Assembly: GCA_904063045.1 (NCBI GenBank)
Contig: CAJFCJ010000004.1
Location: 370,195 to 434,194, forward strand
Length of the DNA: 64,000 nucleotides
Source: Dimorphilus gyrociliatus
Taxonomy: Eukaryota > Animalia > Annelida
Direction of reading: 5' to 3'
The number at the start of each line of letters is the position of its first letter. Within the stretch, counting starts at the first letter, position 1. Position numbers and translations under genes: made by a program. Below the pieces are notes generated by a model, which was given only the letters and a program-made list of their open reading frames with translations, did not search any database and had not been told where the DNA came from. Shown piece after piece: positions 3,701 through 57,383 of the stretch.

Positions 3701-6700
3701 GCCCAGATGGACTTGGAGGAGAGCTGTGCAATTTTGTAGCTCCTCCAGTATTAGGTAAGGGAAATATGTAAGACGTAGAAATTGCTCTCGTCTTATTCAT
3801 CAATGATTATTTGTTATTGTAAATCGACGTGTCTCTAAAATGGTATTACTTTTGGAAAATACTTTCAATCTTACTAATAGTGTAAATAATTATTAATAGC
3901 ATTCCTGTTCTGTAGAATTGCGTAATAAAAATTTACATAGCCATTAGAAAAGTAAAAAAAAAAGATCAACCGGAACTGAGGAAAGAATAACCTTAAAAAA
4001 ACAGTTAAGTGCTGAGTTCAAAGAGTACAATAGGAAATGATAAATAATATTAAAGTTTACACATCCTAAACTCTACTTTTTGATATATCGCCATTTTTAA
4101 AACAGTATCAATAACATAGGTAAAAAAGGATATCACTATAACTATTGTTATTATGACAATAATTATTGTAATAATAAGAGAAGGAGCCTTGAATTATTTT
4201 TAGCCGGATATTTTGTTCACTTTGACGAAGTTGTTGAACATTTTCAAGAAAAGACAGACTATCAAAACCGTTTATTTGCTCACTTTGTCCAAAAATAAGA
4301 ACAACACAACATTATATTATTTTATAGAAATAAGAAAGATTACTAATCATTAATAAATTATATATACTAATATATATAAATTTATATATATATATATATA
4401 TATATATAATGTATATATATTAGTATATATTAGTCTATACACTGTAGATCATGTCAATATTGTAGTTCAACAATTTGTTATTAATAATTATTTATCTTTT
4501 CTATTATTTTCGAGGAATTAGCTTGTTTTATAAGAAATAAACAAGTAGAAAAGTATCACTGTAGTAGATGTCATTACGTTTAGAATATATATATATATTT
4601 GTATAGTATATATATATTAATATATCTGCAAATTTGGTGTAATAGTTAAATAATCTTTTACTCTTTTTATATTTCATCTAAAATAGATTTTATAATTGGT
4701 TTTGCTCTTTTTCTTGTTTATTAGAACAATGCGGTGGAAGATTGATTGCGATGAGCAAGGAAAGAGTTATAACTTCACCAGGTTACTCAGATAGGGGATA
4801 TTATCTGAATGGACAACAATGCAGCTGGAGGATAAGATCTATAGATCCTACAAAAAGGGTTACAGTACAGTTTACTGGGGATTTTGGCCTATACTGCTTT
4901 GTAAATTGCTACCATTGGGTTGAAGTGAAATTCAAAAAGAATCTAGGCTTGACCGGCCCTCGGTAAAATAGAAACTTTCTTATATAAAAGAAACTATTAT
5001 ATAAATACGATATAATAAAATATTATAATCAGCTAAGGGCATTGAAGGGCAAAGGGGTTACTATTAAATCTAATCGTAAAATTATTTAATACCTTTTTCC
5101 TTTTCACTAAAACTCATAAAGGTACTGTTGCGATGAAACGCCTAAAGAAACGTTTAAATCAGAGGGTGACGAACTTGTCGTTAGTATGAAAGCGATCAAT
5201 CACGTTATTGAAAATCGACATAGAAGAGGTTTTAAAATGATAATAAGAATGGGTTAGTATTATACAACTAATTATGCCATCATTCAACACTATTTCTATA
5301 TAGTCTATTAAAAACTTAAATATCGATTAGATGGCGATGAGTGTCAACCAAATCCCTGTAAGAATGGTGCAACATGTAAAGATCTACAATCCAACTATAC
5401 TTGTCAGTGCCTAGACGGATTTTCAGGGAAAGACTGCGAAATAGGTTAGAATTATTCTATTATTACCCTATATAATATAAAAAGAAAAGTACACTTTAAC
5501 TATACAACTAACTATAAGTTGGAAGAAAAAACGGGAAATATTATTTAAAAAAATAATGAATGAAACCAAGGTAATTTTAACAATGAGGAAAAAAAATAAA
5601 GGGATTTTTTTTGCCACCCGCATAGGGTCGTAAATCTTTTCTATCCTCTTTTATTAAATATTACAAGATACATTAATAATAGATTTGTTGTTTTTTCTAT
5701 TATCAACTATTATTCTTAATAAAAAGATAGAGAAACTATCGCTTCAATTGACAAAGAATTGAATATCGTTTTATAATTGTAACAGAAGCAGAAGTGAAGG
5801 ATCCTTGTAAAAGTAATCCTTGTTTAAAAAATGGTACTTGTATAGTAATTGATAAAGATAATTATCAATGTAAATGTGCACCATACTATATTGGTACAAG
5901 ATGCGAAAGATATTATAAACCGACAAGAAATCCAAGTAAGTAACAGCTAATTTATATATTTTATACTTTAAATATTATTTAAAAAGAATTTAAATATAAA
6001 ATATTTACTATCTGTCATAATATTATTTTAGGATATTTGATATTTTCTCTCTATCATTCTTTCTCTCATCTCTTATTTTCTTTTTATTTTTGTCTTCCTC
6101 TCCCCCTCTCTCTCGTATACTTCACCTTATATAGGCCTCTTGTTTTACTCGAAAAGATTTTATATATACATATATATATATATATATAGTATATATTTAT
6201 ATATATGTTGTAATTCAATAATAGTAATATTTGATGAATCTATATACATTTTGCACAGTGTTTACAGCTGGAATTGCTTTCTATCATTTCAAAGAGATAT
6301 TTGATAGATTTCTATGTAATTTGATTTTAAGTCTTAAAAAGAAAAAGTTCTATCACACTTTTCTATTGACACGATATCGATAATTAAATTTATCTTTTTC
6401 TAGAAAAAAAAGTAGAGATTGACGTAATATCTATTTATTCTATAAAGAAAATGCACCCATACGAAAGAATATCATTAAATTTAAACAGTATATAGTTTTA
6501 TTGATAAGAATAAATAAATAGCAATAATTGAAAATTTAGAAGAATATTTTTTGAACAAAGACAACCCCTTTTTTTCAAATAGTAATTCAGTATTCAGGCA
6601 ATATTTAACTGTAATAATGTCAAATTATCAATGCTTTATAAATATTTCTTGTCATTAATGTTCTCAACAGAAATAATACTAAAAACTAAGCTAACAAATT

Positions 6701-47745: not shown

Positions 47746-50700
47746 TCAACACTGTTTTGAAAGAATATTTTTCATTTCTAGAATAGTAGCTTTCTTTTTC
47801 ATTGGTCCATTGTAGCTGCTAACAACAATGTATTTATTATTATTAATAATTTCAACACTTTCAACAGAACCAGCGGCGTTATAACTACATATTTGCTGTC
47901 CTGTTTCAATATTCCATAATCTCACTGTATTATCAACAGAATATGTAATTATATTTCTTCCATTATTGAAAATAATGGTATCGGTAACTTCTCTTGCGTG
48001 GCCTTTCAATGAAATTTTCTTTGTGAAATTATCAGTTTCGTATAAAATAAGCTTGTTGTTTCTATGAGCTACTGAACCTAATTTGGTGTGATGATTGCTA
48101 TGCCTTCCGGAATATATCTTACAAACATAATCCATTTTGTCCTTTTTAATTCGCATTAGGCCAATCGAAATTGTATCATAACTTTTATCGCCTGACAAAC
48201 AACAGAGGTAATAGGTTCCACTATCAAAACTTCTGTAATTTACACCTTGTGTATAAAGATATCTTTTTGAGTGTCCTTCTTCTATATCAATTAGATCGAA
48301 ATATTTCTTAATTTGGCCCATGGGAACGGAAATAATAAAAAAACGTTCGTCTTCCGTAATTCCAATCTTATAGAAGGATAATTTTCTCTTAGATCCAGAA
48401 GAGTCAAATGTTGGTAGATCCATTTTTAAACTATGAATGTTTATCGACTTTATTAAATCAAAGTTCGGTATGGAATATATTTCCAATAAACCTTCTCTCA
48501 TAAGATAGATTTTATCATTGTAGATGATCTGTTAATTATCATTTATAAACGCCTGATTGATATTGAAAATATGAAATATACGAAATACTTACATTAAAAT
48601 ATGAATCTTGCAGCATTTTATGAGCAGTTACTGTCCACTTACTTGCCTCCGTATCATAGAAACTTATATAGAATGATTGCTCATCTCTTATAAAATGATT
48701 AACAATAAAATATTTATCAACAATTGTTACATTTGCTCCCGGCTTCCGTTTGAATTTTATTGAACTATTGTTTTCAAGAGATTGTTGATACGTTTCGGTG
48801 AATGAATACGAAACCTTTTCATCGATAGTCCCATCAAAGTTCCAGAAGCGAAGACCAGCTGGAAAAGAACTTGGCAGAGAAATAATATGTGTTTTTGTGG
48901 AGGTTAACTTAAGAAAATCTTCATTTACATCAATTAACTTTTCTCTTATAACCAGAGGCTTTTTTTCGACTGGAGCAGCAATATCTTTATCATCTTTATC
49001 TTTATCGTCTTTATCTTTATCATCTTTGTGTTTATCATCTTGGTCTTTATCATCTTTGTGTCTATCATCTTTGTCATTACAATCTTTGTCTTTATCTTCT
49101 TTGTCTTTATCATCTTTCTCCTTATCATCTTTCTCCTTATCATCATTATCTTTATCATCATTTGAACTGGACCCCTCTGGAACTTCTTTTGATTCTTCTT
49201 CCTTCTTACCATCCTGAAAAATATTTTCAGCACTAATACTTGTTATATCCAAGTTAAGTTCATCTTGATTGTCAATATTGCCTTTAGCGGGTGAGGACTC
49301 TAATAAATTATCAATATCCCATATTTTCATATACTGATCTTGTCCCATACTTAGAATAGAATTATCACCAAACTGTGACAAACTGGTAATGGTATGATTA
49401 TGAGCCTTAAACTTTCGAATATGAGCTAAACTTTCAATAGAAAGAATAATAATTGCTCCGTATTGAAAACCAATTAAACAATAAGTAAAATCTTTTACTG
49501 ATATTAAACTGGTAGGACTTTTAACTAAATTTTTTAACAATTCCATAGAGTATTCATCAGTCTTTCTATTCCATTTACAAATGTAAGATGGCTTTTTCTC
49601 AGTGGATTTAAATTGACTAACTATTAGAATGGTGGATGCATCATTATTAAAATTAACAGCAAGTGGTTGAGCTATATTATTTTTATCATTTCCTTCTTCT
49701 ACATTCTTTGGTTGGGTTAATTCACTTTTAGTGAATGTTTTAGTTTCACAATCGAATATAAGAATTTTAGCATATTTTTTGAAACCTCCAAGAGCTCCAA
49801 TAATTTGGGAATCGTTAGAAAAATTGACATCGAATAAAGATCCATTTAAATCGATCATTTGTTTCTCATATAGAATTTCCATTTTTTCTAAATCATATAA
49901 ATAAATCATGTCATGTGAAATAGTTAATAGCCATTTCTCTTCTTTCACTAGTATGCACTTTTCTATATGTTTTCTTGCTTTAAATTTTACATTATGCAAT
50001 ATGGTATCTTCTTCCAAATCGACTACAAATATTCTTGATGTATAACTGCCAGATTTATTAGTGTGACCGCCTTCGAATAGTCTTATTCCCATGATTAATT
50101 TGGAATCGTCCTTTGTAATTGTTATGCATCTTACTGTTATTTTTCTATCTTGCGGAGCAGGTTCGCAATATTTTGTAATTTTATACGAATCGCCAGTATC
50201 CAATTCATAAATTTTTACCTTATTCATTTCTGCGTAAATAAGATAACGGCAATTGTTTGTTGTTATAAATAGAGTTTGTTTCATTAAATCAATTGTTGCC
50301 ACTTGTTCTCTATTACTATTTACTATTGTTAGTTGAGTTACTGTTGAAGTTATTTCACTTCTTAATGCAACTAATGTTTGAAAGTCTCTAGTTGTTTTAC
50401 CAATACTCCCAATAAGTCGACTGAACTTTAATGGGCTCTCGGGACCTTGACCTCTGATGTTGTTTATAGGCACCAACACTGGATCGCTAGTGTTCTGCAT
50501 AAAGTTTTTACAGCTATGCAGTATGCTTGCTATTCCAGGATGAGTTTGAGATATAATATACAGTCTTTTTAAAATCTCATGCGGGAAAGAACTGGGATCG
50601 AGAAGGAGGGCGCCGTAGGACAGCTGAAGGAAATCTTTCATATAGCTAACCTCAATATCCTTCTGAACATCGAGAAATGTATCATAAGTTTGACATATAT

Positions 50701-53700
50701 CATAAAGTGGCTGACATTTTAGTTTTGTGCTCAAGAAATTGAAATTTAACAAACATTTCTCTTTAAGTTGTTCCAACTGATTAGATTTCAATAAATGATA
50801 CGGTAAAGAGTTTAATTTACGAATATTATGAATCGAAGTTGGTTGGTGTGAAATTTGCCTGTCAGCGTCCTTAAGTAACTTTTTATTTCTCCATTCCAAT
50901 TGTATTGATCTTCTAATTCCACTTTCAGCAATGTAAATTTCAGATAATTTGGAATGAAGTTCTATTTCCCTATCTTTAACGTATCGATTGAAAGCCGTCT
51001 CTAAAAATTGCCTATGATACCAAGCTAAAACAGTCTTTCCGTCAGTCATTCTTTCAGCAAGATATTCTCTAAGATCGTGCTGAATTCTAGACCAGAGTAG
51101 AGACGGTATTCGAACAACATCTTCAAGGGGCGGATCGTGATATCTGTAGACGTCGTTGAGAACCTCATCATCGCACGATAAAGCGTCTTCGACTTCAATA
51201 GGACTCAAACCTTGTCTACCACAAGTTAAATAGCCCATAGACCTGGCCACTAATAATTTTCCATTCTTCCTTTCAACTCCATCAAATAAATATTTTATCG
51301 CTTCGTTAGCTGTTTCAGATATTTTGATTGATTCTATTGGATCATAAGAATGCCAGGTTTTGGCATAATCTAAGGATAATTTGAGAAAAAGAGGTTGTTT
51401 GCTTCCCTCGAATGCTTTCAAAATAAGGTTACGCTGTGGCTCAGTCAATGTCTTTTTCCTCTTTTCCAAATAGGCCGTAATAATGTCTGAAGCAACATTG
51501 GCCGATAAAGGCCTTAATGAGACGAAATCTTTACAGTTTAATCTTCTCCGGACATTTTCAACAAGAGTCGTATTTTCGGACAGAACCGATATTATTACTT
51601 TGACGTTTTTTGGAAACATTTTTGGCAACCATGCCATTGAATGTGCACCATACGAATTGTTTAACTGATCTATTGAATCTAAAATAATGACCAATTTGAC
51701 TGTTGATCTCCTCTTCTTTATGAAGGCAATCAGTTTTTGAAATTCGAATCTTATGCCACTCATAGTTTGTAAGGAATCTTCTGGAGGCTGTATTATTTTG
51801 AAAACTACACATATCTGTTCAACAAGACTCTTTAACGTTGACAAAACGGAAGAACTCGATGCTGATGTTCCAAGAAACCTGTGTATGACGAAAGTTTTGG
51901 GATAAACACTTTCCCATTTGGGTATTAGACGAACTATATGGGCCAATAAAGCTGTTTTGCCAAATCCTGAAGGTGCACAAACAACTAAAGGCTGAGATTG
52001 ACCTTTTCGAAGAATATATTCACGAATTTCCTCAATCTCTTCTTCCCTTCCAAAGAATACCTCGCACTTGGTATTGGCAAATTTAGAATGATGAAGAGCC
52101 TCTTGATAAACTGCAGGATAGGATTTAGCAATTTTCTCATCCTTTAATTTCTTTTCTATGAGAGTCTTGAGGTCATTTATGAAATGCTCAGAGAATTCTT
52201 TCAGGTAGTTTCCGTGTTCTTCGTGTTGACAATCTTCCAGAGAGCACTTGTCCCAAGCTAGTTTATATTCACGAATATTCTTTCCTTGGAGCTTGAGAGG
52301 TATTCTTTCAGTAGCTAATTTAGTTCTAAAATGCAAAGAACTATTATCCGGAACTCTTTTATTAGAATCAATATCTATGAATCTGGAAGCTGTTGAAAAA
52401 TCAATATTCTCCTTTAGTCCATGAAGTTCTCTGACATAGCAGAGAGATTTCTCATCGGCATTATCAACGTTAAGAAGTCCCCTTTCAATTTCATTTTCCG
52501 TAACACTGAGAAAATACCTAATTCTGTTACTCTCATCTAAAAGTTTTTTATCAAAAGCTGCTTGTGCGCTTTGACGTAATATAGACCGTAATTTCTTAAA
52601 TACTTCCTGCCACTTCGCAATATGTTCCGCTCGCTCTTTTTCCTTGTCAGAATCGAGGTTGTTATAGTGTTCGAGTCTGGAAGTAATCGGCTGAAGTACA
52701 TAAACTGGTGGAATCGTATTTGTGCATTCCTTAAACCAGTCGTCCAGGAGACCAACATCATCAGGACATAAAATTTTAGCTTCTTCCTTTATGATTGAAA
52801 ACTCAGTAGATTCTATATGATGGGGAAAAGGTTGAAATCCATATCTATTTCCAATCAGTGTCTGAAAAGATAGAGATAGTATATAGTAATTGTAAAAATG
52901 CAATGACTTACTACAAATGCTGGTCCGACAGATAATTTTTGACAATTTTCTATTTCCATTAGGCACAAATCGGTAACTTGATGGTCGTCAACCATATCTT
53001 GAGTAACTCCCCATCTCATATCGGCAACTTGAAAGTCGAGGCCGTTGTTTGAACAGTAGTTTCGGAGTTCAGGATAGGCTCTTTGTGGAAGAATATTTCT
53101 CTCCGCCTTGAAATCAGTAAATGTTGAGCTAAGGAATATCCGGACAACATTTGAAGGCATAAATGGTGGGCTGTCAACATCCCCTCTCAAAATTCTCATA
53201 ACATCTAGGGAGTATGGTTCCATATCATCAAACGTATCTTCAGTCTCCTCATCACTCTGGATGTCATTTAAAACTTTATCATCCATATTAAGCATAAATC
53301 CTGTTGTTCCTGCTGTTAATGGTTCTGTAGGTGTCACTACCGGTGTCTTACTTGTATCTACATCTGTTATAACTAATTTAGATAGTTCTTTCTTTTTTTT
53401 CGATTTTTTTGCAGTAGCTTGCGTTATTTCCGGTTCAGTCACCGACAGTTCAATTTGTTGTTCTTCTTGTTTTTTACCAACAGTTGTACTATCAATAATG
53501 TCTTCAACTGGTTCATTGATCAGTGGGAATCTGTTGGATAAAGAAAAAAATCATAAATAGTAAATATCTAAAATGTTGATTTTAGCAAAATCAATAAAGT
53601 TTGAATATGAAAATGTTTTTGCTATTTTTTATAATTTGAAGGCAGTAAGCATTGAAGAAAAATACAAAAGAGTAACATCAATAACATTAAATTATGAGTC

Positions 53701-54106
53701 TTTTTTTGTCATCTAATTGATATCATACTTTTTTTCTGATGTTTTCTTCGTCTCCTTTAAATTTTTCATCTCTTCATCACCACTCTCTTCATTATGTAGT
53801 TTCGATATGGTCTCAGAATTATCATCCTTAATAAATGTATCCCAAAAAATATTATCATCACCCATTGCTTTCAATTTTTCAACGCATTTGATCAAAAAAT
53901 CTACTGGAGAGTCTGGCTTTTTGAATACCAGAGCAGCAGTCAAGTACTACAATACACACAATATATACTGTTTATATGTGGATAGATGAACCTATAGTGT
54001 ATAATTTGTTTGTATGTCAATTACAAACCTGAAATAACTCTGGTATTCTCCTTTTAGCTAAATATTCCGCTGTGTCACCGCTTTCAGAGCGGGGGAGTTC
54101 AGCCAT
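47746..54106 (-). CDS. NACHT- and WD40-repeat protein (NWD1/NWD2-like STAND NTPase) with an N-terminal RIIa/Dpy-30-like docking domain
   Basis: Exons 54029-54106 and 53729-53946, then an exon starting at 53530 that encodes the DUF4062-like RIFLSSTFTD...DMRWGV. A 4269-nt exon 48593-52861 carries Walker A APSGFGKT (51953-51976), Walker B IILDSIDQL and WD repeats. The last exon ends at 47746. Confidence 0.88.
48983..49160 (-). repeat. Coding imperfect tandem repeat (about 15-nt period) encoding DKDDK-rich charged low-complexity sequence
   Basis: Repeated ATCTTTATC/ATCATCTTT units translate to DKEKDDKEKDDKDK...KDDKDKDDKDKDDKD between WD repeats. Confidence 0.9.
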
Positions 54107-54237
54107 TACACTCTTTTTTATTAATTAGGTTGCTTAAACTACTTCTATGAAAAATATTAATTGATTATCAAAATAAACTGTCCCTTGCCTCTAGATTTTA
54201 GATCAAAGTAGTATTATATTATCACGTGATAATACCT

Positions 54238-54250
54238 GTCGCCTAGTTAC
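54238..54250 (+). promoter_or_regulatory. Putative RFX X-box in a bidirectional promoter
   Basis: GTCGCCTAGTTAC has 2 mismatches to GTTGCCTAGTAAC. The palindromic E-box ATCACGTGAT is at 54221-54230. Both lie between divergent ATGs at 54106 and 54577. Confidence 0.4.
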
Positions 54251-54576: not shown

Positions 54577-57383
54577 ATGGTATTTTTTTGTTATTTCTAA
54601 TTTAACTAGAACCTAATTAACGATTCAATTTAGCTAATTACTGTTAATGTACACTATTCTTTAAGCCTACCGAAACATCAGCTATTCGAGTAATCGCTAA
54701 ATGTCGTCCTACAATAAAAAATGAACAAAATAAAGCTGGTAAAAAGATTACTAAAATCCAAGGCGATAAACTATCACTGGACGTTCCTGGAAAGGTAAAT
54801 AATTATGTGACATGAACTTCTTATCATTCATTTTTTGTTTAAGGATCAAACCTTTTCATTTGACAAAGTATACGGAGCAGATGTAAAGAATGTAAGTAAT
54901 AATAGTACAGTATACTGTAAATTTTCCAGATATTTATGTATTTTGAACGTTTAACAATAATGTGAAAATGTTGAAAATATTCACGACAGACTCAAATATT
55001 TCGGGAAGAATGCGATAGTTTAGCTCAACGTTTGCTAAATGGATATAACATTTCTCTTTTAGCTGTTGGGGCAGTAAGTTGCGTTTTTCTAATTCCCTTT
55101 CATTTTTAGTTTATATAATAGTATTGATTAACTCTGTCTACTAGACTGGATCGGGAAAGAGTCATTTAATGAATGGTACTGAACTAGATCAGGGAATAAT
55201 CCCTCAAATGATTAAATCCGTAAATAATGAGATGGCCAATCAACGCAATCAAAAACAATTTTTCTCAACTATAAGTTATGTTGAGGTGATTTGATTAATT
55301 AATTTAAGTTATGACATTTTAAAAATACCCTTCACGTTCATTAACAGATTTTGAATGAAGAACTAACAGATTTATTAAATCCTCATGATGATGAGATGTG
55401 CATTAGAGAGCACAATCAATTGGGAATGTAAGAATATAGATGATTATTTTGCATAGCTATCATTGAAATTAAATCCTTAAATGCAGATATGTGGAAAGAT
55501 TATCTGAATTAATCTGTAAAGAAGAAGATGATATGATGAGCTATTATGAACAAGGTAATAGAGCTAGGAAGATGGGAACAAATGATATACATAATCATAG
55601 AGCTAAGTGCGAGCTTAATTTTAAGTAGAAAAAAGAAATCTACTACTATCTTTATCACAGGGCAAACGGTATTGTTATAATACAAATCGAACAAAAGGAT
55701 CTTAAGAGTACAGGGAAATTGGGAGTTAAATCAAAGTTGGTTATCGCTGATATGGCTGGTATAGAGGGGGCTTTTAATAAAAAGGATAAAGATAAGAGTA
55801 TTGAAACGTTCGTTAGCGTTGTGACTGCGGGTAAGCAAGGAGGCAATAATCCAAAGGGAAATTCCAAATTAACCAAAATTTTATCCGATGCTATTGGTGG
55901 AAATTCTATATGCTATACATTTCTAACATTATCTCAAATGGATTCGGATTATTTAAATACTCAGCATACTCTTAGCGTTGGACAAACTTTGAAATCAATA
56001 AAGAACAAATTTAAAATCAACTTGAACGAGACAAGTAGCGTCATTAACGACTTAAGAGAAGAGATAGCGAAATTAAGGGAGAAAATCTCAAAGAATCCAG
56101 ACAACTGTAAAGAAGATGTTGCAAGAATGCAACAATTAATTCAAGATTTGAAAACTGCTAAACAACAGAATTGGGACGAGAAGGAAAAATTATCAGAAAG
56201 ATATTCCAAAGAGAGGCAGAAGAATCTAGCTAATAAAGGGGTTTTAGATTGGGTTCTTGACACGTCCTCCAATAAAGGGAATAAGGAGAAGCAAGAACGT
56301 GCTCTATTATTACAGAAGGAGAAAGATCAGTTAACTCTTGAATATAAAGAAAGAAGGAGAGCAGTAGATGATCTTAAAAATGATCTTCAGATGAAAGTCA
56401 GCGAGCACTCTCAGTATTCTGAATCTGGTAAAGTTAACAGCAACGAAAATAAGAAGAAAATTTCTATAATACATGAAACAAAGGAAAAGCTAAAAGCGGA
56501 GAGTGAAGCTCTCAAAGATGTAAAGAAGAGATTAAAAGAAGTACAAGATGATTTAAAAACTACTGATGATGTATGTAGAAAGTTTTTAAAGTTTTTATTT
56601 ATTTTACTCTTTATTTTATCTTATAGGATGCTTCCGTATATATAGTTGCAAAAGGAGACTTGGAAAGTAGAATCAAAGTTCAAGAGATTGAAAGAAGACG
56701 ATTGGAGGATAATCACAAGGCACATTTAGATGATGAAACGGAAAAGATTCGAATGGAAATTGAACAACGTAAAATGGAAATAAAAGTAAGAGGATTCTGT
56801 TTATCTTCATAAAAAGATTTTTATTTTAATAATCTTTCTTTAAGTCACAAAACAAGAACTACACAACCGAAGATGGAATAAGATTGGAGCAAGAATTAGT
56901 GGGACTCAAATCAGAGAAACATCTTGTGTCTCTTAGAGTATATATCTTTGTTCTATTTCATCAATCTAATCAATTGTAATATTTCATCTTGATACATCTG
57001 TTCAACTAGATTCAACATCTTCAAGAGGAGAAGCTTAAAATAGAACAAGACTTACATCAGATGCAAAAGAGACAAAAAGAGGAATTTGAACTTCAACAAT
57101 TGCAACATTTTCAAGCATTTAGAAAATATCGCGAAATTTACGATAAACAGAAAGCTGTCATTGAGGAAAGATTTCGTAAGTTGCTTGAAGATTCTGTGCA
57201 GGATGCAATTTTTCTGTCCGTAAGAAATGAGGAATTAATGGGGGAGAATAATAAGTTACGTCAAGGTGACTATTGTTATTATTAGACTAGAAATATACAT
57301 TACATATATTAACAATTTCAGAGATTGCTCAATTGAAAGATCAAGCGAGCGTAAGGCCAAATTCGAGCAACAAAAGCAAATAA
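54577..57383 (+). CDS. Divergent kinesin-like protein (motor domain plus coiled-coil tail)
   Basis: The coding part of exon 1 is the ATG only. Then IRVIAKCRP, FSFDKVYG, P-loop GA|TGSGKS, ISYVE|ILNEELTDLL, DMAGIE, SKLTKILSDAIGGNS and a long coiled coil. Stop 57381-57383. Confidence 0.85.

What the first reader, a model, noticed from the sequence alone, without database searches (positions are those of the whole stretch)
53729..54106. RIIa/Dpy-30-like docking domain fused to a NACHT-WD40 STAND NTPase
Two small exons encode AEYLAKRRIPELFQ|YLTAALVFKKPDSPVDFLIKCVEKL, the pattern of PKA-RII/Dpy-30 dimerisation-docking domains. They splice in frame (phase 0, then phase 2 into 53530) to the DUF4062-NACHT-WD40 body. 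Vertebrate NWD1/2 are not known to me to carry this domain. These domains bind AKAP-type amphipathic helices and are enriched in axonemal proteins. Inference: an AKAP-anchored, pre-dimerised STAND switch, possibly in cilia or sperm, rather than a classical immune NLR.
Basis: partly seen in the sequence, partly recalled or inferred. Interest (0 to 1): 0.7.

Follow-up and report, generated by a model that had tools for sequence, protein, structure and literature searches.

The report
Docking domain fused to NWD1-like ATPase
In the tiny marine worm Dimorphilus gyrociliatus and its relatives, a large NWD1-like switch ATPase starts with a small dimerisation/docking domain of the type that anchors adenylate kinases and radial-spoke proteins in cilia, a domain combination I found described nowhere.

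Summary
The window is Dimorphilus gyrociliatus (annelid). The two small minus-strand exons (54106-54029 and 53946-53729) have canonical GT-AG borders. They join in frame (phase 0, then phase 2) to exon 3 at 53530. The public gene model DgyrCDS2759 (1988 aa) uses exactly these junctions.

The 60 N-terminal residues are a true docking/dimerisation (D/D) domain of the RIIa clan, of the AK5/EFCAB10 subtype. This rests on sequence matches to solved structures, a family profile and a predicted fold.

The comparative evidence is strong:
- Exon 3 opens with 76-79 conserved, stop-free, ATG-free codons in two species, so it needs an upstream start exon.
- The same split D/D exons lie upstream, on the same strand, of NWD1-like genes in 7 of 9 loci examined. 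All fall in one well-supported clade.

NWD1-like proteins outside the clade lack the domain. Deuterostome, cnidarian and nematode members carry a C-terminal CaaX box; several mollusc-clade members carry an N-terminal MGxxxS motif.

Best reading: a clade-specific protein-docking address tag on a STAND NTPase. Anchoring in cilia is plausible but only circumstantial. Novelty: a new variant of a known kind.

The parts
54029..54106 (-). Exon 1: start codon at 54106, 26 codons. It encodes the N-terminal helix and most of helix I of the D/D domain (...AEYLAKRRIPELFQ) and ends in phase 0.
   Evidence: Homologous exon 1 with the same phase-0 donor after ...LFQ/LLQ/LFK occurs in L001, L002, L008, L009 and L010. 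pN 0.12 against pS 0.65 versus L001.
53947..54028 (-). Intron 1 (82 nt, GT..AG). It splits the D/D domain.
   Evidence: The intron position is conserved in five other loci.
53729..53946 (-). Exon 2 (218 nt, ends in phase 2). It encodes the end of helix I, the Pro-containing turn, helix II, the conserved G..N.xWDTF extension, and then an acidic linker.
   Evidence: pN 0.09 against pS 0.83 over the first 45 codons versus L001. Profile hits in L001-L003 and L008-L010 at E 1e-9 to 1e-24.
53827..54085 (-). Coding span of the D/D module, residues 8-66 of P0001, interrupted by intron 1. Predicted helices are 8-18, 21-35 and 40-54, followed by the WDTF extension.
   Evidence: AlphaFold2 with a 60-sequence alignment: mean pLDDT 78.5, blocks 11-50 at 88-93. 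The top seven structural matches are all D/D domains. PDB sequence matches.
53531..53728 (-). Intron 2 (198 nt, GTATGA..AACAG, 22% G+C). It has an in-frame stop at 53715-53713 if retained and holds no AATAAA or ATTAAA.
   Evidence: The L001 counterpart is 251 nt, diverged, with the same phase-2 donor.
52912..53530 (-). Exon 3: a disordered linker with a basic cluster (KKSKKKK) and an acidic patch, then the start of DUF4062.
   Evidence: (DUF4062 25.4 bits, cut-off 24.7).
53302..53529 (-). The 5' part of exon 3: 76 codons with no ATG and no stop. It is conserved as protein in L001 (79 codons) and therefore needs an upstream start exon.
   Evidence: 0 stops in frame against 9 and 9 in the other two frames (L001: 0 against 5 and 11). 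Chance of 76 open codons is about 1.6e-3. pN 0.26 against pS 0.55. An in-frame TGA at 53553-53551 lies just upstream of the acceptor.
48593..52861 (-). Exon 4 (1423 codons): the rest of DUF4062, the NACHT NTPase (Walker A GFGKT), the NWD1-type winged helix and the WD40 propellers, including a D/K-rich low-complexity insert.
   Evidence: (NACHT 33.5 bits, HTH_NWD1 46.6 bits).
47746..48528 (-). Exon 5: the last WD40 blades and the stop codon. The C-terminus is ...NILSKQC, with no CaaX box.
54223..54250 (-). Promoter footprint 117-144 bp upstream of the ATG: an X-box-like GTAACTAGGCGAC (54250-54238) and an E-box CACGTG (54228-54223). Both are also present upstream of the L001 ortholog.
   Evidence: The site count is not significant on its own (2 matches in the window against 1.44 expected). 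The conservation is what counts.

Best explanation
This is the 5' end of one five-exon gene (54106-47746, minus strand) of Dimorphilus gyrociliatus. The gene encodes an NWD1-like STAND NTPase (DUF4062, NACHT, NWD1-type winged helix, WD40 propellers). Its first 66 residues form a docking/dimerisation (D/D) domain of the RIIa clan, AK5/EFCAB10 subtype. A disordered linker of about 160 residues with acidic and basic patches joins it to DUF4062. The same architecture marks a whole clade of related, probably annelid or other lophotrochozoan, NWD1-like genes. It was most likely acquired once at the base of that clade. Inferred mechanism: like other D/D domains, the module pairs with a second D/D helix pair, either its own or that of another D/D protein (as EFCAB10 does with AK8). 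The pair forms a four-helix bundle whose groove binds an amphipathic helix on a scaffold protein. That would fix the N-terminal DUF4062 end of the switch ATPase at a defined protein platform, possibly the axoneme. It would take the place of the lipid anchors that other NWD1-family members carry (C-terminal CaaX, N-terminal myristoylation motif). Shown: the exons, their frames, the domain homology and fold, conservation in relatives, and absence of the domain from other NWD1-like proteins. Inferred: splicing at the RNA level, dimerisation, the docking partner and the location in the cell.
For: Splice model: canonical sites and phases, identical to public model DgyrCDS2759. That model came from EvidenceModeler with PASA transcripts weighted 10 to 1 (PMC7854359). 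Exon 3 begins with 76 (L001: 79) ATG-free, stop-free codons under purifying selection, with an in-frame stop just upstream of the acceptor. Intron 2 is only 198 nt and has no poly(A) signal. The species has no operons or trans-splicing (PMC7854359). L001 (73% identical body) keeps both small exons, the phase-2 donor and the in-frame acceptor, while the introns differ in length and sequence. More distant loci L002, L003, L008, L009 and L010 (about 37-39% identical bodies) carry the D/D helix-II exon upstream on the same strand. All but L003, where exon 1 was not found, also show exon 1 with the intron at the same place. In-frame GT-AG paths to the DUF4062 exon exist in L002, L008 and L009. The basic linker cluster lies in the D/D exon in L008-L010 but in the DUF4062 exon in the window and L001. 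No adenylate-kinase exons occur in the window or any locus. Domain identity. One clade. Other NWD1-likes lack the domain and carry CaaX or MGxxxS instead.
Against: Whether transcripts supported this particular public model is unknown. Pfam RIIa (PF02197) and Dpy-30 (PF05186) do not hit P0001 itself; only sub-threshold Tex55 and DUF5586 hits appear. Foldseek against the PDB gave no significant match, and the VIA-align Z scores are modest (4.8-6.2), as expected for a 45-residue helical domain. In L002, L008 and L009 an in-frame ATG lies shortly after the candidate acceptor of the DUF4062 exon, so separate genes cannot be excluded there from sequence alone. No D/D exon was seen within 4.3-5 kb upstream in L004 and L011. 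The word-based protein searches found no second annotated full-length fusion protein. The top 150 of the 564 profile hits contained no NACHT-WD40 protein; the remaining 414 were not listed. The species behind L002-L011 are unknown. Dimerisation, docking and localisation are untested.
Confidence: 0.72

Rival explanations
1. There are two separate genes. A small D/D-only protein of about 102 aa (exons 1-2, ending at the stop at 53715-53713) lies just upstream of an NWD1-like gene that starts at an internal Met of exon 3 (MLNMDD...). The public model and the reader's model would then be chimeric.
For: An in-frame stop follows the exon-2 donor after 4 codons (window) or 3 codons (L001). Small D/D-only ORFs exist in metagenome contigs. 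Deuterostome NWD1-likes start only about 25-35 residues before DUF4062. In-frame ATGs exist in the DUF4062 exons. L001 has an ATTAAA right after the stop.
Against: The 76-79 codons upstream of the first Met of exon 3 are open, ATG-free and protein-conserved in two species, and an in-frame stop lies just upstream of the acceptor. A 198-nt gap would have to hold a 3' UTR, a poly(A) site, a promoter and a 5' UTR, yet it contains no AATAAA or ATTAAA. The phase-compatible donor and acceptor are conserved in L001. The linker's basic cluster sits on either side of the intron in different species. Collinearity holds in 7 of 9 loci across a deep clade.
Confidence: 0.1
2. The fusion is real, but the locus also makes shorter products. 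One would be a D/D-only peptide from retention of intron 2. The other would be a D/D-less NWD1-like isoform from a downstream start. The docking module would then be an optional, regulated tag.
For: A stop follows soon after the exon-2 donor in both species. Conserved in-frame Met codons (GFML) lie in exon 3. PMC7854359 analyses intron retention by intron size.
Against: There is no transcript evidence either way. Stops soon after a donor are expected in introns of 22% G+C.
Confidence: 0.15
3. The resemblance to docking domains is fortuitous: the segment is just an amphipathic helical N-terminus.
For: No direct Pfam RIIa or Dpy-30 hit. Foldseek was not significant. The single-sequence AlphaFold model was poor.
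Against: phmmer matches EFCAB10 at 1.5e-6. 564 profile hits, 74 at E<=1e-10, form one family with Y15, L24, F25, L32, P37, W61 and F64 kept in this protein. The family profile hits EFCAB10, FAP385, RI-alpha, AK8 and DPY30 structures. 18 of 60 members hit Pfam Dpy-30. The top seven VIA-align matches are all D/D domains.
Confidence: 0.02
4. Exons 1-2 are really the 5' exons of an adenylate-kinase or EFCAB10-like gene that overlaps or surrounds the NACHT gene.
For: The nearest large family with this domain is multi-domain adenylate kinases. The best solved match is EFCAB10.
Against: No adenylate-kinase exon occurs in the 64-kb window or in any of the 11 loci. Pfam finds no EF-hand in exon 2. The arrangement recurs in many species with only NWD1-like exons downstream.
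Confidence: 0.01

Closest known systems
NWD1 (NACHT and WD repeat domain-containing 1) and its C. elegans ortholog QUI-1
   Same: The body is the same: DUF4062, NACHT, NWD1-type winged helix and WD40 propellers. It is 30-36% identical to named NWD1-like proteins of hemichordates, echinoderms, a coral, molluscs and nematodes.
   Different: Those proteins start about 25-35 residues before DUF4062, or have other extensions. None has a D/D domain. Deuterostome, cnidarian and nematode members end in a polybasic CaaX box, and several mollusc-clade members start with MGxxxS; this protein has neither. It belongs to a separate clade that is sister to bivalve LOC proteins.
AK5-type N-terminal D/D domain of adenylate kinases (AK5 and multi-ADK kinases)
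   Same: This is the closest sequence family. It shares the helix pair and also the following G..N.xWDTF extension, at 38-47% identity over about 60 residues with profile E down to 8e-27. The domain sits at the N-terminus in both.
   Different: Here the domain is followed by a STAND NTPase and not by adenylate-kinase domains. No kinase exons are nearby.
EFCAB10 D/D domain (radial spoke; PDB 9fqr)
   Same: This is the best solved match by sequence (E=1.5e-6 alone, 9e-10 with the profile). A chain of the same entry is also the top structural match (9fqr_Pr, Z 6.2), although the tool does not name that chain's molecule. EFCAB10's D/D domain pairs with the AK8 D/D domain and binds RSPH3B, which gives a working model for docking (PMC12541429).
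   Different: EFCAB10 is a roughly 130-aa protein named for an EF-hand domain. No EF-hand is found here, and the residues after helix II follow the AK5 pattern.
PKA RI/RII D/D domains and DPY30 (RIIa clan, as surveyed in PMC8339350)
   Same: The predicted fold is the same: rmsd 1.6-2.2 A over 41-49 residues to RII-alpha and RI-beta D/D domains. There are weak but consistent sequence matches.
   Different: The relationship is only distant, and the Pfam models of both families miss this protein. That survey's human table (18 members) and list of metazoan and non-metazoan family members name no STAND protein, and the words NACHT, NWD and WD40 do not occur in its main text.

Membership tests
D/D domain superfamily (RIIa clan: PKA-R-like and DPY-30-like) | Significant sequence similarity to established D/D domains | tested here: met
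   EFCAB10 at E=1.5e-6 with the single sequence. The family profile hits EFCAB10 at 9e-10, FAP385 at 2e-5, RI-alpha at 3e-4, AK8 at 6e-4 and DPY30 at 1e-3.
D/D domain superfamily (RIIa clan: PKA-R-like and DPY-30-like) | Direct hit to Pfam RIIa (PF02197) or Dpy-30 (PF05186) above threshold | tested here: not met
   Neither hits P0001:1-60, 1-110 or 1-300 at E<=10; only Tex55 (22.2 bits, cut-off 26.6) and DUF5586 appear. Among 60 family members, 18 hit Dpy-30 (best 5e-6) and 1 hits RIIa. Membership therefore rests on transitive homology.
D/D domain superfamily (RIIa clan: PKA-R-like and DPY-30-like) | Helix-turn-helix of about 45 residues with a Pro-containing turn, superposable on solved D/D domains | tested here: met
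   AF2 model with helices 8-18, 21-35 and 40-54, and pLDDT 88-93 over residues 11-50. The top seven VIA-align hits are D/D domains with Z 4.8-6.2; five of them superpose at rmsd 1.6-2.6 A over 38-50 residues. Foldseek was not significant.
D/D domain superfamily (RIIa clan: PKA-R-like and DPY-30-like) | Forms an X-type four-helix-bundle dimer that binds an amphipathic helix | not testable with these tools
   Only single chains can be folded here. This needs multimer prediction or biochemistry.
AK5-type D/D family | Conserved Y..(I/V)P.LFE, (R/K)P.DP..F(L/I) and G..N.xWDTF signature at the N-terminus | tested here: met
   The nearly invariant columns Y15, L24, F25, L32, P37, W61 and F64 are all present in P0001; E26 is Q.
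AK5-type D/D family | Followed by adenylate-kinase domain(s) | tested here: not met
   There is no ADK in P0001 and no ADK exon in the window or loci. The protein shares the domain but is not an adenylate kinase.
NWD1-like STAND NTPases | DUF4062 + NACHT + NWD1-type winged helix + WD40 propellers in this order | tested here: met
   DUF4062 25.4 bits (cut-off 24.7), NACHT 33.5 (26.7), HTH_NWD1 46.6 (27), several propeller families, and WD40 29.1 (27) in exon 5. E=0 to 1e-100 to named NWD1-like proteins.
NWD1-like STAND NTPases | C-terminal polybasic CaaX box, seen in most complete deuterostome, cnidarian and nematode members | tested here: not met
   P0001 ends ...NILSKQC, and its clade ends in ...KRGLILKIQNL-like tails without CaaX.
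EFCAB10 | D/D domain followed by an EF-hand domain in a protein of about 130 aa | tested here: not met
   Pfam finds no EF-hand in exon 2 or P0001:1-300.

The most novel reading that the evidence does not exclude
NWD1-family switch ATPases may need a subcellular address tag, and evolution has swapped that tag at least twice. The tags seen are a C-terminal prenylation box (deuterostomes, cnidarians, nematodes), an N-terminal myristoylation motif (molluscs), and in the Dimorphilus clade a protein-protein D/D dock. In the boldest form, the D/D dock heterodimerises with the near-identical D/D domain of axonemal adenylate kinases, as EFCAB10 does with AK8, and sits on an RSPH3-type helix. That would place a STAND nucleotide switch inside motile cilia, next to the enzymes that set the local ATP/ADP ratio.
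Probability: 0.15. Interest if true: 0.85.

Novelty: new variant of a known kind. Interest (0 to 1): 0.55.

Why it matters
STAND NTPases such as NLRs, Apaf-1 and NWD1 are usually thought to be brought together only when a ligand triggers oligomerisation. What NWD1 proteins do, and where, is still poorly understood (PMC8871372). A conserved N-terminal docking/dimerisation domain offers a concrete handle. It predicts a fixed binding partner with an amphipathic helix, and a pre-paired or scaffold-bound resting state. Both can be tested with a 70-residue fragment. Seeing three different anchoring devices on one protein family suggests that localisation is central to its function. The finding would also add a member to the D/D domain superfamily, whose 2021 survey lists no STAND protein. 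Finally, it shows that a D/D domain can go unannotated when an intron splits it and the Pfam models miss it.

Tried and rejected
- Pfam on each exon alone gave nothing for the D/D part, because the domain is split by intron 1.
- Pfam on P0001:1-60, 1-110 and 1-300 gave only sub-threshold Tex55 and DUF5586 hits.
- The word-based protein searches were blank, both for the N-terminus within long proteins and as a 102-aa stand-alone query.
- The single-sequence AlphaFold model was poor (pLDDT 53) and was not used for searching.
- Foldseek against the PDB gave E>=3, with DPY30 ranked first.
- The closest small D/D ORFs (P0073, P0075, P0081) lie on 0.7-1.4 kb metagenome contigs without context.
- Cluster look-ups gave no organism names for the relatives.
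- The idea that exons 1-2 belong to an adenylate kinase gene was rejected.
- The neighbouring divergent kinesin is kinesin-3/KIF13B-like by its best partial match, which gives no clear ciliary signal.
- Literature searches linking NWD1 to ciliated cells found almost nothing beyond QUI-1.
- The IQ-TREE quick search did not finish in time, so the tree is from FastTree.
The joined N-terminus was used only as the stored public protein P0001, and relatives were searched exon by exon by reference.

Full report
**What is there.** The window is AT-rich (about 30% G+C). The large minus-strand ORFs match, at 100% identity, the public protein DgyrCDS2759 of the annelid Dimorphilus gyrociliatus (P0001, 1988 aa).
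- Exon 1 runs from the ATG at 54106 to 54029 (26 codons, phase 0, donor GT 54028-27).
- Exon 2 runs from 53946, after AG 53948-47, to 53729. It ends two bases into a codon, before donor GTATGA.
- Exon 3 starts at 53530, after a pyrimidine tract and AG. Its first base completes the split codon, and the frame runs into DUF4062.
- Mapping P0001 back on the window gives five exons: 54106-54029, 53946-53729, 53530-52912, 52861-48593 and 48528-47746.
Its precomputed Pfam list has no RIIa or Dpy-30 entry.

**Is the N-terminus a docking domain?** Scanned exon by exon, Pfam sees nothing, because intron 1 cuts the domain in two. On the stored protein, residues 1-60 give only sub-threshold Tex55 and DUF5586 hits, and no RIIa or Dpy-30 hit.

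Against solved structures the same 60 residues match the D/D domain of EFCAB10 in a bovine sperm axoneme (9fqr, E=1.5e-6). They also match the Chlamydomonas radial-spoke protein FAP385 (0.015) and DPY30 (0.04-0.1).

A profile built exon-wise from four species found 564 proteins at E<=1e-3 in the 1.84-billion-protein library, 74 of them at E<=1e-10.
- All ten long hits that I scanned are adenylate kinases with one to four ADK stretches and this domain at or near the N-terminus.
- From my own knowledge, the vertebrate-like members are AK5.
- The closest hits (41-53% identity) are small ORFs on short metagenome contigs.
- The family shares the helix pair and a following G..N.xWDTF extension. This protein keeps Y15, L24, F25, L32, P37, W61 and F64.

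A 60-sequence profile of the family hits EFCAB10 (9e-10), FAP385 (2e-5), PKA RI-alpha D/D (3e-4), AK8 (6e-4) and DPY30 (1e-3). Eighteen of the 60 members hit Pfam Dpy-30.

AlphaFold2 with that alignment gives helices 8-18, 21-35 and 40-54, at pLDDT 88-93 over residues 11-50. Foldseek finds nothing significant. An exhaustive VIA-align search puts D/D domains in all of the top seven places:
- the top hit is a chain of the bovine sperm axoneme entry 9fqr, the entry in which EFCAB10 is the best sequence match;
- then FAP385, RI-beta, RII-alpha with AKAP, a human axoneme chain, a PKA fusion and a radial-spoke head-neck chain;
- Z is 4.8-6.2, and five of the seven superpose at rmsd 1.6-2.6 A over 38-50 residues.

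The ESM Atlas feature search also points to RIIa, Dpy-30 and DUF5586 clusters, as a lead only. The domain is therefore real. In the terms of the D/D superfamily survey (PMC8339350), it is of the AK5/EFCAB10 kind rather than RII or DPY30 proper.

The case rests on four lines of sequence evidence.

1. Exon 3 needs an upstream start exon.
   - From its acceptor to its first Met (GFML...), exon 3 has 76 codons with no ATG and no stop. The other two frames have 9 stops each.
   - An in-frame TGA lies just upstream of the acceptor.
   - The chance of 76 open codons at the local composition is about 1.6e-3.
2. A 73%-identical relative (L001, a Logan genomic contig) has the same two small exons, the same phase-2 donor (AA|GTAYGA) and an in-frame acceptor.
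   - Its intron 2 differs in length (251 against 198 nt) and in sequence.
   - Codon comparison gives pN/pS of 0.12/0.65 for exon 1, 0.09/0.83 for the domain part of exon 2, and 0.26/0.55 for the ATG-free part of exon 3. In L001 that part is 79 codons, again without an ATG or a stop.
   - That stretch is therefore translated, and only an upstream exon can supply the start codon.
3. The gap between the exons is too small for two genes.
   - Intron 2 is 198 nt, 22% G+C, and has no AATAAA or ATTAAA.
   - The genome paper reports no operons or trans-splicing and a median intron of 66 bp (PMC7854359).
   - The annotation gave PASA transcripts ten times the weight of ab initio calls.
4. More distant relatives carry the same exons.
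   - In L002, L003, L008, L009 and L010 (bodies about 37-39% identical), the helix-II exon lies 0.3-3.7 kb upstream of the DUF4062 exon on the same strand.
   - L002, L008, L009 and L010 also show exon 1: a Met, then ..KYL.E..I.EL(F/L)(Q/K), with a GT donor at exactly the same phase-0 position. Exon 1 of L003 was not found.
   - In-frame GT-AG paths to the DUF4062 exon exist in L002 (through a basic linker exon), L008 and L009.
   - The linker's basic cluster lies in the D/D exon in L008-L010 but in the DUF4062 exon in the window and L001. That ties the two halves into one reading frame.
   - No adenylate-kinase exon exists in the window or in any locus.
   - L004 and L011 show no D/D exon within the 4.3-5 kb available.

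I put the fusion in Dimorphilus at about 85%.

**How wide is it?** A FastTree phylogeny of 41 NWD1-like proteins puts all D/D-positive loci, and the two undetermined ones, in one clade of 15 rows (support 100). The clade splits first into P0005+P0010, whose loci I did not examine, and the other 13 rows. Those 13 then split into Dimorphilus+L001 against the rest.
- Its sister group (support 99) is a pair of bivalve proteins without the domain.
- Next comes a clade of MGxxxS-starting and other mollusc proteins together with nematode QUI-1-like proteins.
- Deuterostome and coral NWD1-likes lie outside.
- The IQ-TREE run did not finish.

None of the other 69 NWD1-like proteins has the domain. Complete deuterostome proteins start 25-35 residues before DUF4062. 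One gain at the base of the clade is the simplest reading. The organisms behind the unnamed loci could not be determined.

**Address tags.**
- Most complete deuterostome, coral and nematode proteins end in a polybasic CaaX box.
- Four proteins of the mollusc-containing clade, two of them named scallops, begin with MGxxxS, a myristoylation-like motif.
- The D/D clade has neither.

My table agrees for the relatives I hold.

**How it most likely works (inference).** D/D domains pair into a four-helix bundle whose groove binds an amphipathic helix. EFCAB10's D/D domain pairs with that of AK8 and binds RSPH3B in the radial spoke (PMC12541429). DPY30 and PKA R subunits work the same way on ASH2L and on AKAPs (PMC8339350).

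By analogy, the N-terminus would dimerise the STAND protein, or pair it with another D/D protein. It would then tether the DUF4062 end, through a flexible linker of about 160 residues, to a scaffold.

A ciliary address is suggested by four hints:
- the radial-spoke proteins among the nearest solved relatives;
- the adenylate-kinase family, whose multi-ADK forms are, to my knowledge, flagellar;
- an X-box-like site (54250-54238) with a CACGTG (54228-54223) that is conserved upstream of the L001 ortholog, although its count is not significant in the window;
- QUI-1, which acts in ciliated sensory neurons but is largely cytosolic there.

None of this is a test, and I give the ciliary reading roughly 35-40%.

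**Novelty.** The gene model is public, but its D/D domain is unannotated. The D/D superfamily survey's human table and its list of metazoan and non-metazoan family members name no STAND protein, and the words NACHT, NWD and WD40 do not occur in its main text. I found no paper linking NWD1 proteins to such a domain. The finding is a new variant (domain accretion) of a known family, conserved across a clade. It is not a new kind of system.

**Limits.**
- There is no RNA evidence.
- The relatives are unnamed.
- The tree is from FastTree only.
- The structural Z scores are modest.
- Dimerisation, partner and localisation are untested.
The joined N-terminus was used only as the stored public protein P0001, and all relatives were handled exon by exon.

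Noticed in passing
window 54223-54250; L001 440-485: An X-box-like motif lies a few bases upstream of an E-box CACGTG. It reads GTAACTAGGCGAC in Dimorphilus and GTAACTTGGTAAC in the relative. Both motifs are conserved between the two species in an otherwise diverged promoter, 117-196 bp upstream of the ATG. The motif count alone is not significant in the window (2 found, 1.44 expected).
   Followed up: partly
P0013, P0020, P0022-P0026, P0028, P0031, P0042, P0043, P0045, P0047, P0049, P0058 (C-termini); P0033, P0046, P0050, P0053 (N-termini): NWD1-like proteins of deuterostomes, a coral and nematodes end in a polybasic CaaX box. Four proteins of the mollusc-containing clade, two of them named scallops, start with MGxxxS (myristoylation-like) and end in acidic tails. 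The clade with the docking domain has neither.
   Followed up: partly
window 48946-49233 (minus strand, inside exon 4): A D/K-rich low-complexity insert of about 60 residues (DKDKDD-type repeats) sits between WD40 blades. The L001 ortholog has a much shorter acidic stretch at that place.
   Followed up: no
window 53713-53728; L001 1017-1029: In both species a stop codon follows the exon-2 donor within 3-4 codons. Retention of intron 2 would therefore give a docking-domain-only peptide of about 100 aa. In L001 an ATTAAA lies right after that stop.
   Followed up: no
window 53380-53420 (KKSKKKK); L008 about 2290-2330; L009 about 5190-5230; L010 about 3800-3850; L002 about 4730-4790: A basic cluster (K/R-rich, followed by L.x.K/R-hydrophobic) recurs in the linker about 100-130 residues after the docking domain in all species. 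It might be a nuclear-localisation-like or lipid-binding patch. Its exon location differs between species.
   Followed up: partly
window 54835-57300 (+ strand): A divergently transcribed kinesin gene lies head-to-head with the STAND gene. The end of its motor domain and its neck best match KIF13B (kinesin-3) and OSM-3 in the PDB. The family assignment was not resolved.
   Followed up: partly
L005, L006, L007 (metagenome contigs ERZ23499020, ERZ28653860): The closest relatives of the docking domain (41-53% identity) are encoded without the intron that splits the domain in the annelid-like loci. They sit on very short contigs, so what they are fused to is unknown.
   Followed up: partly
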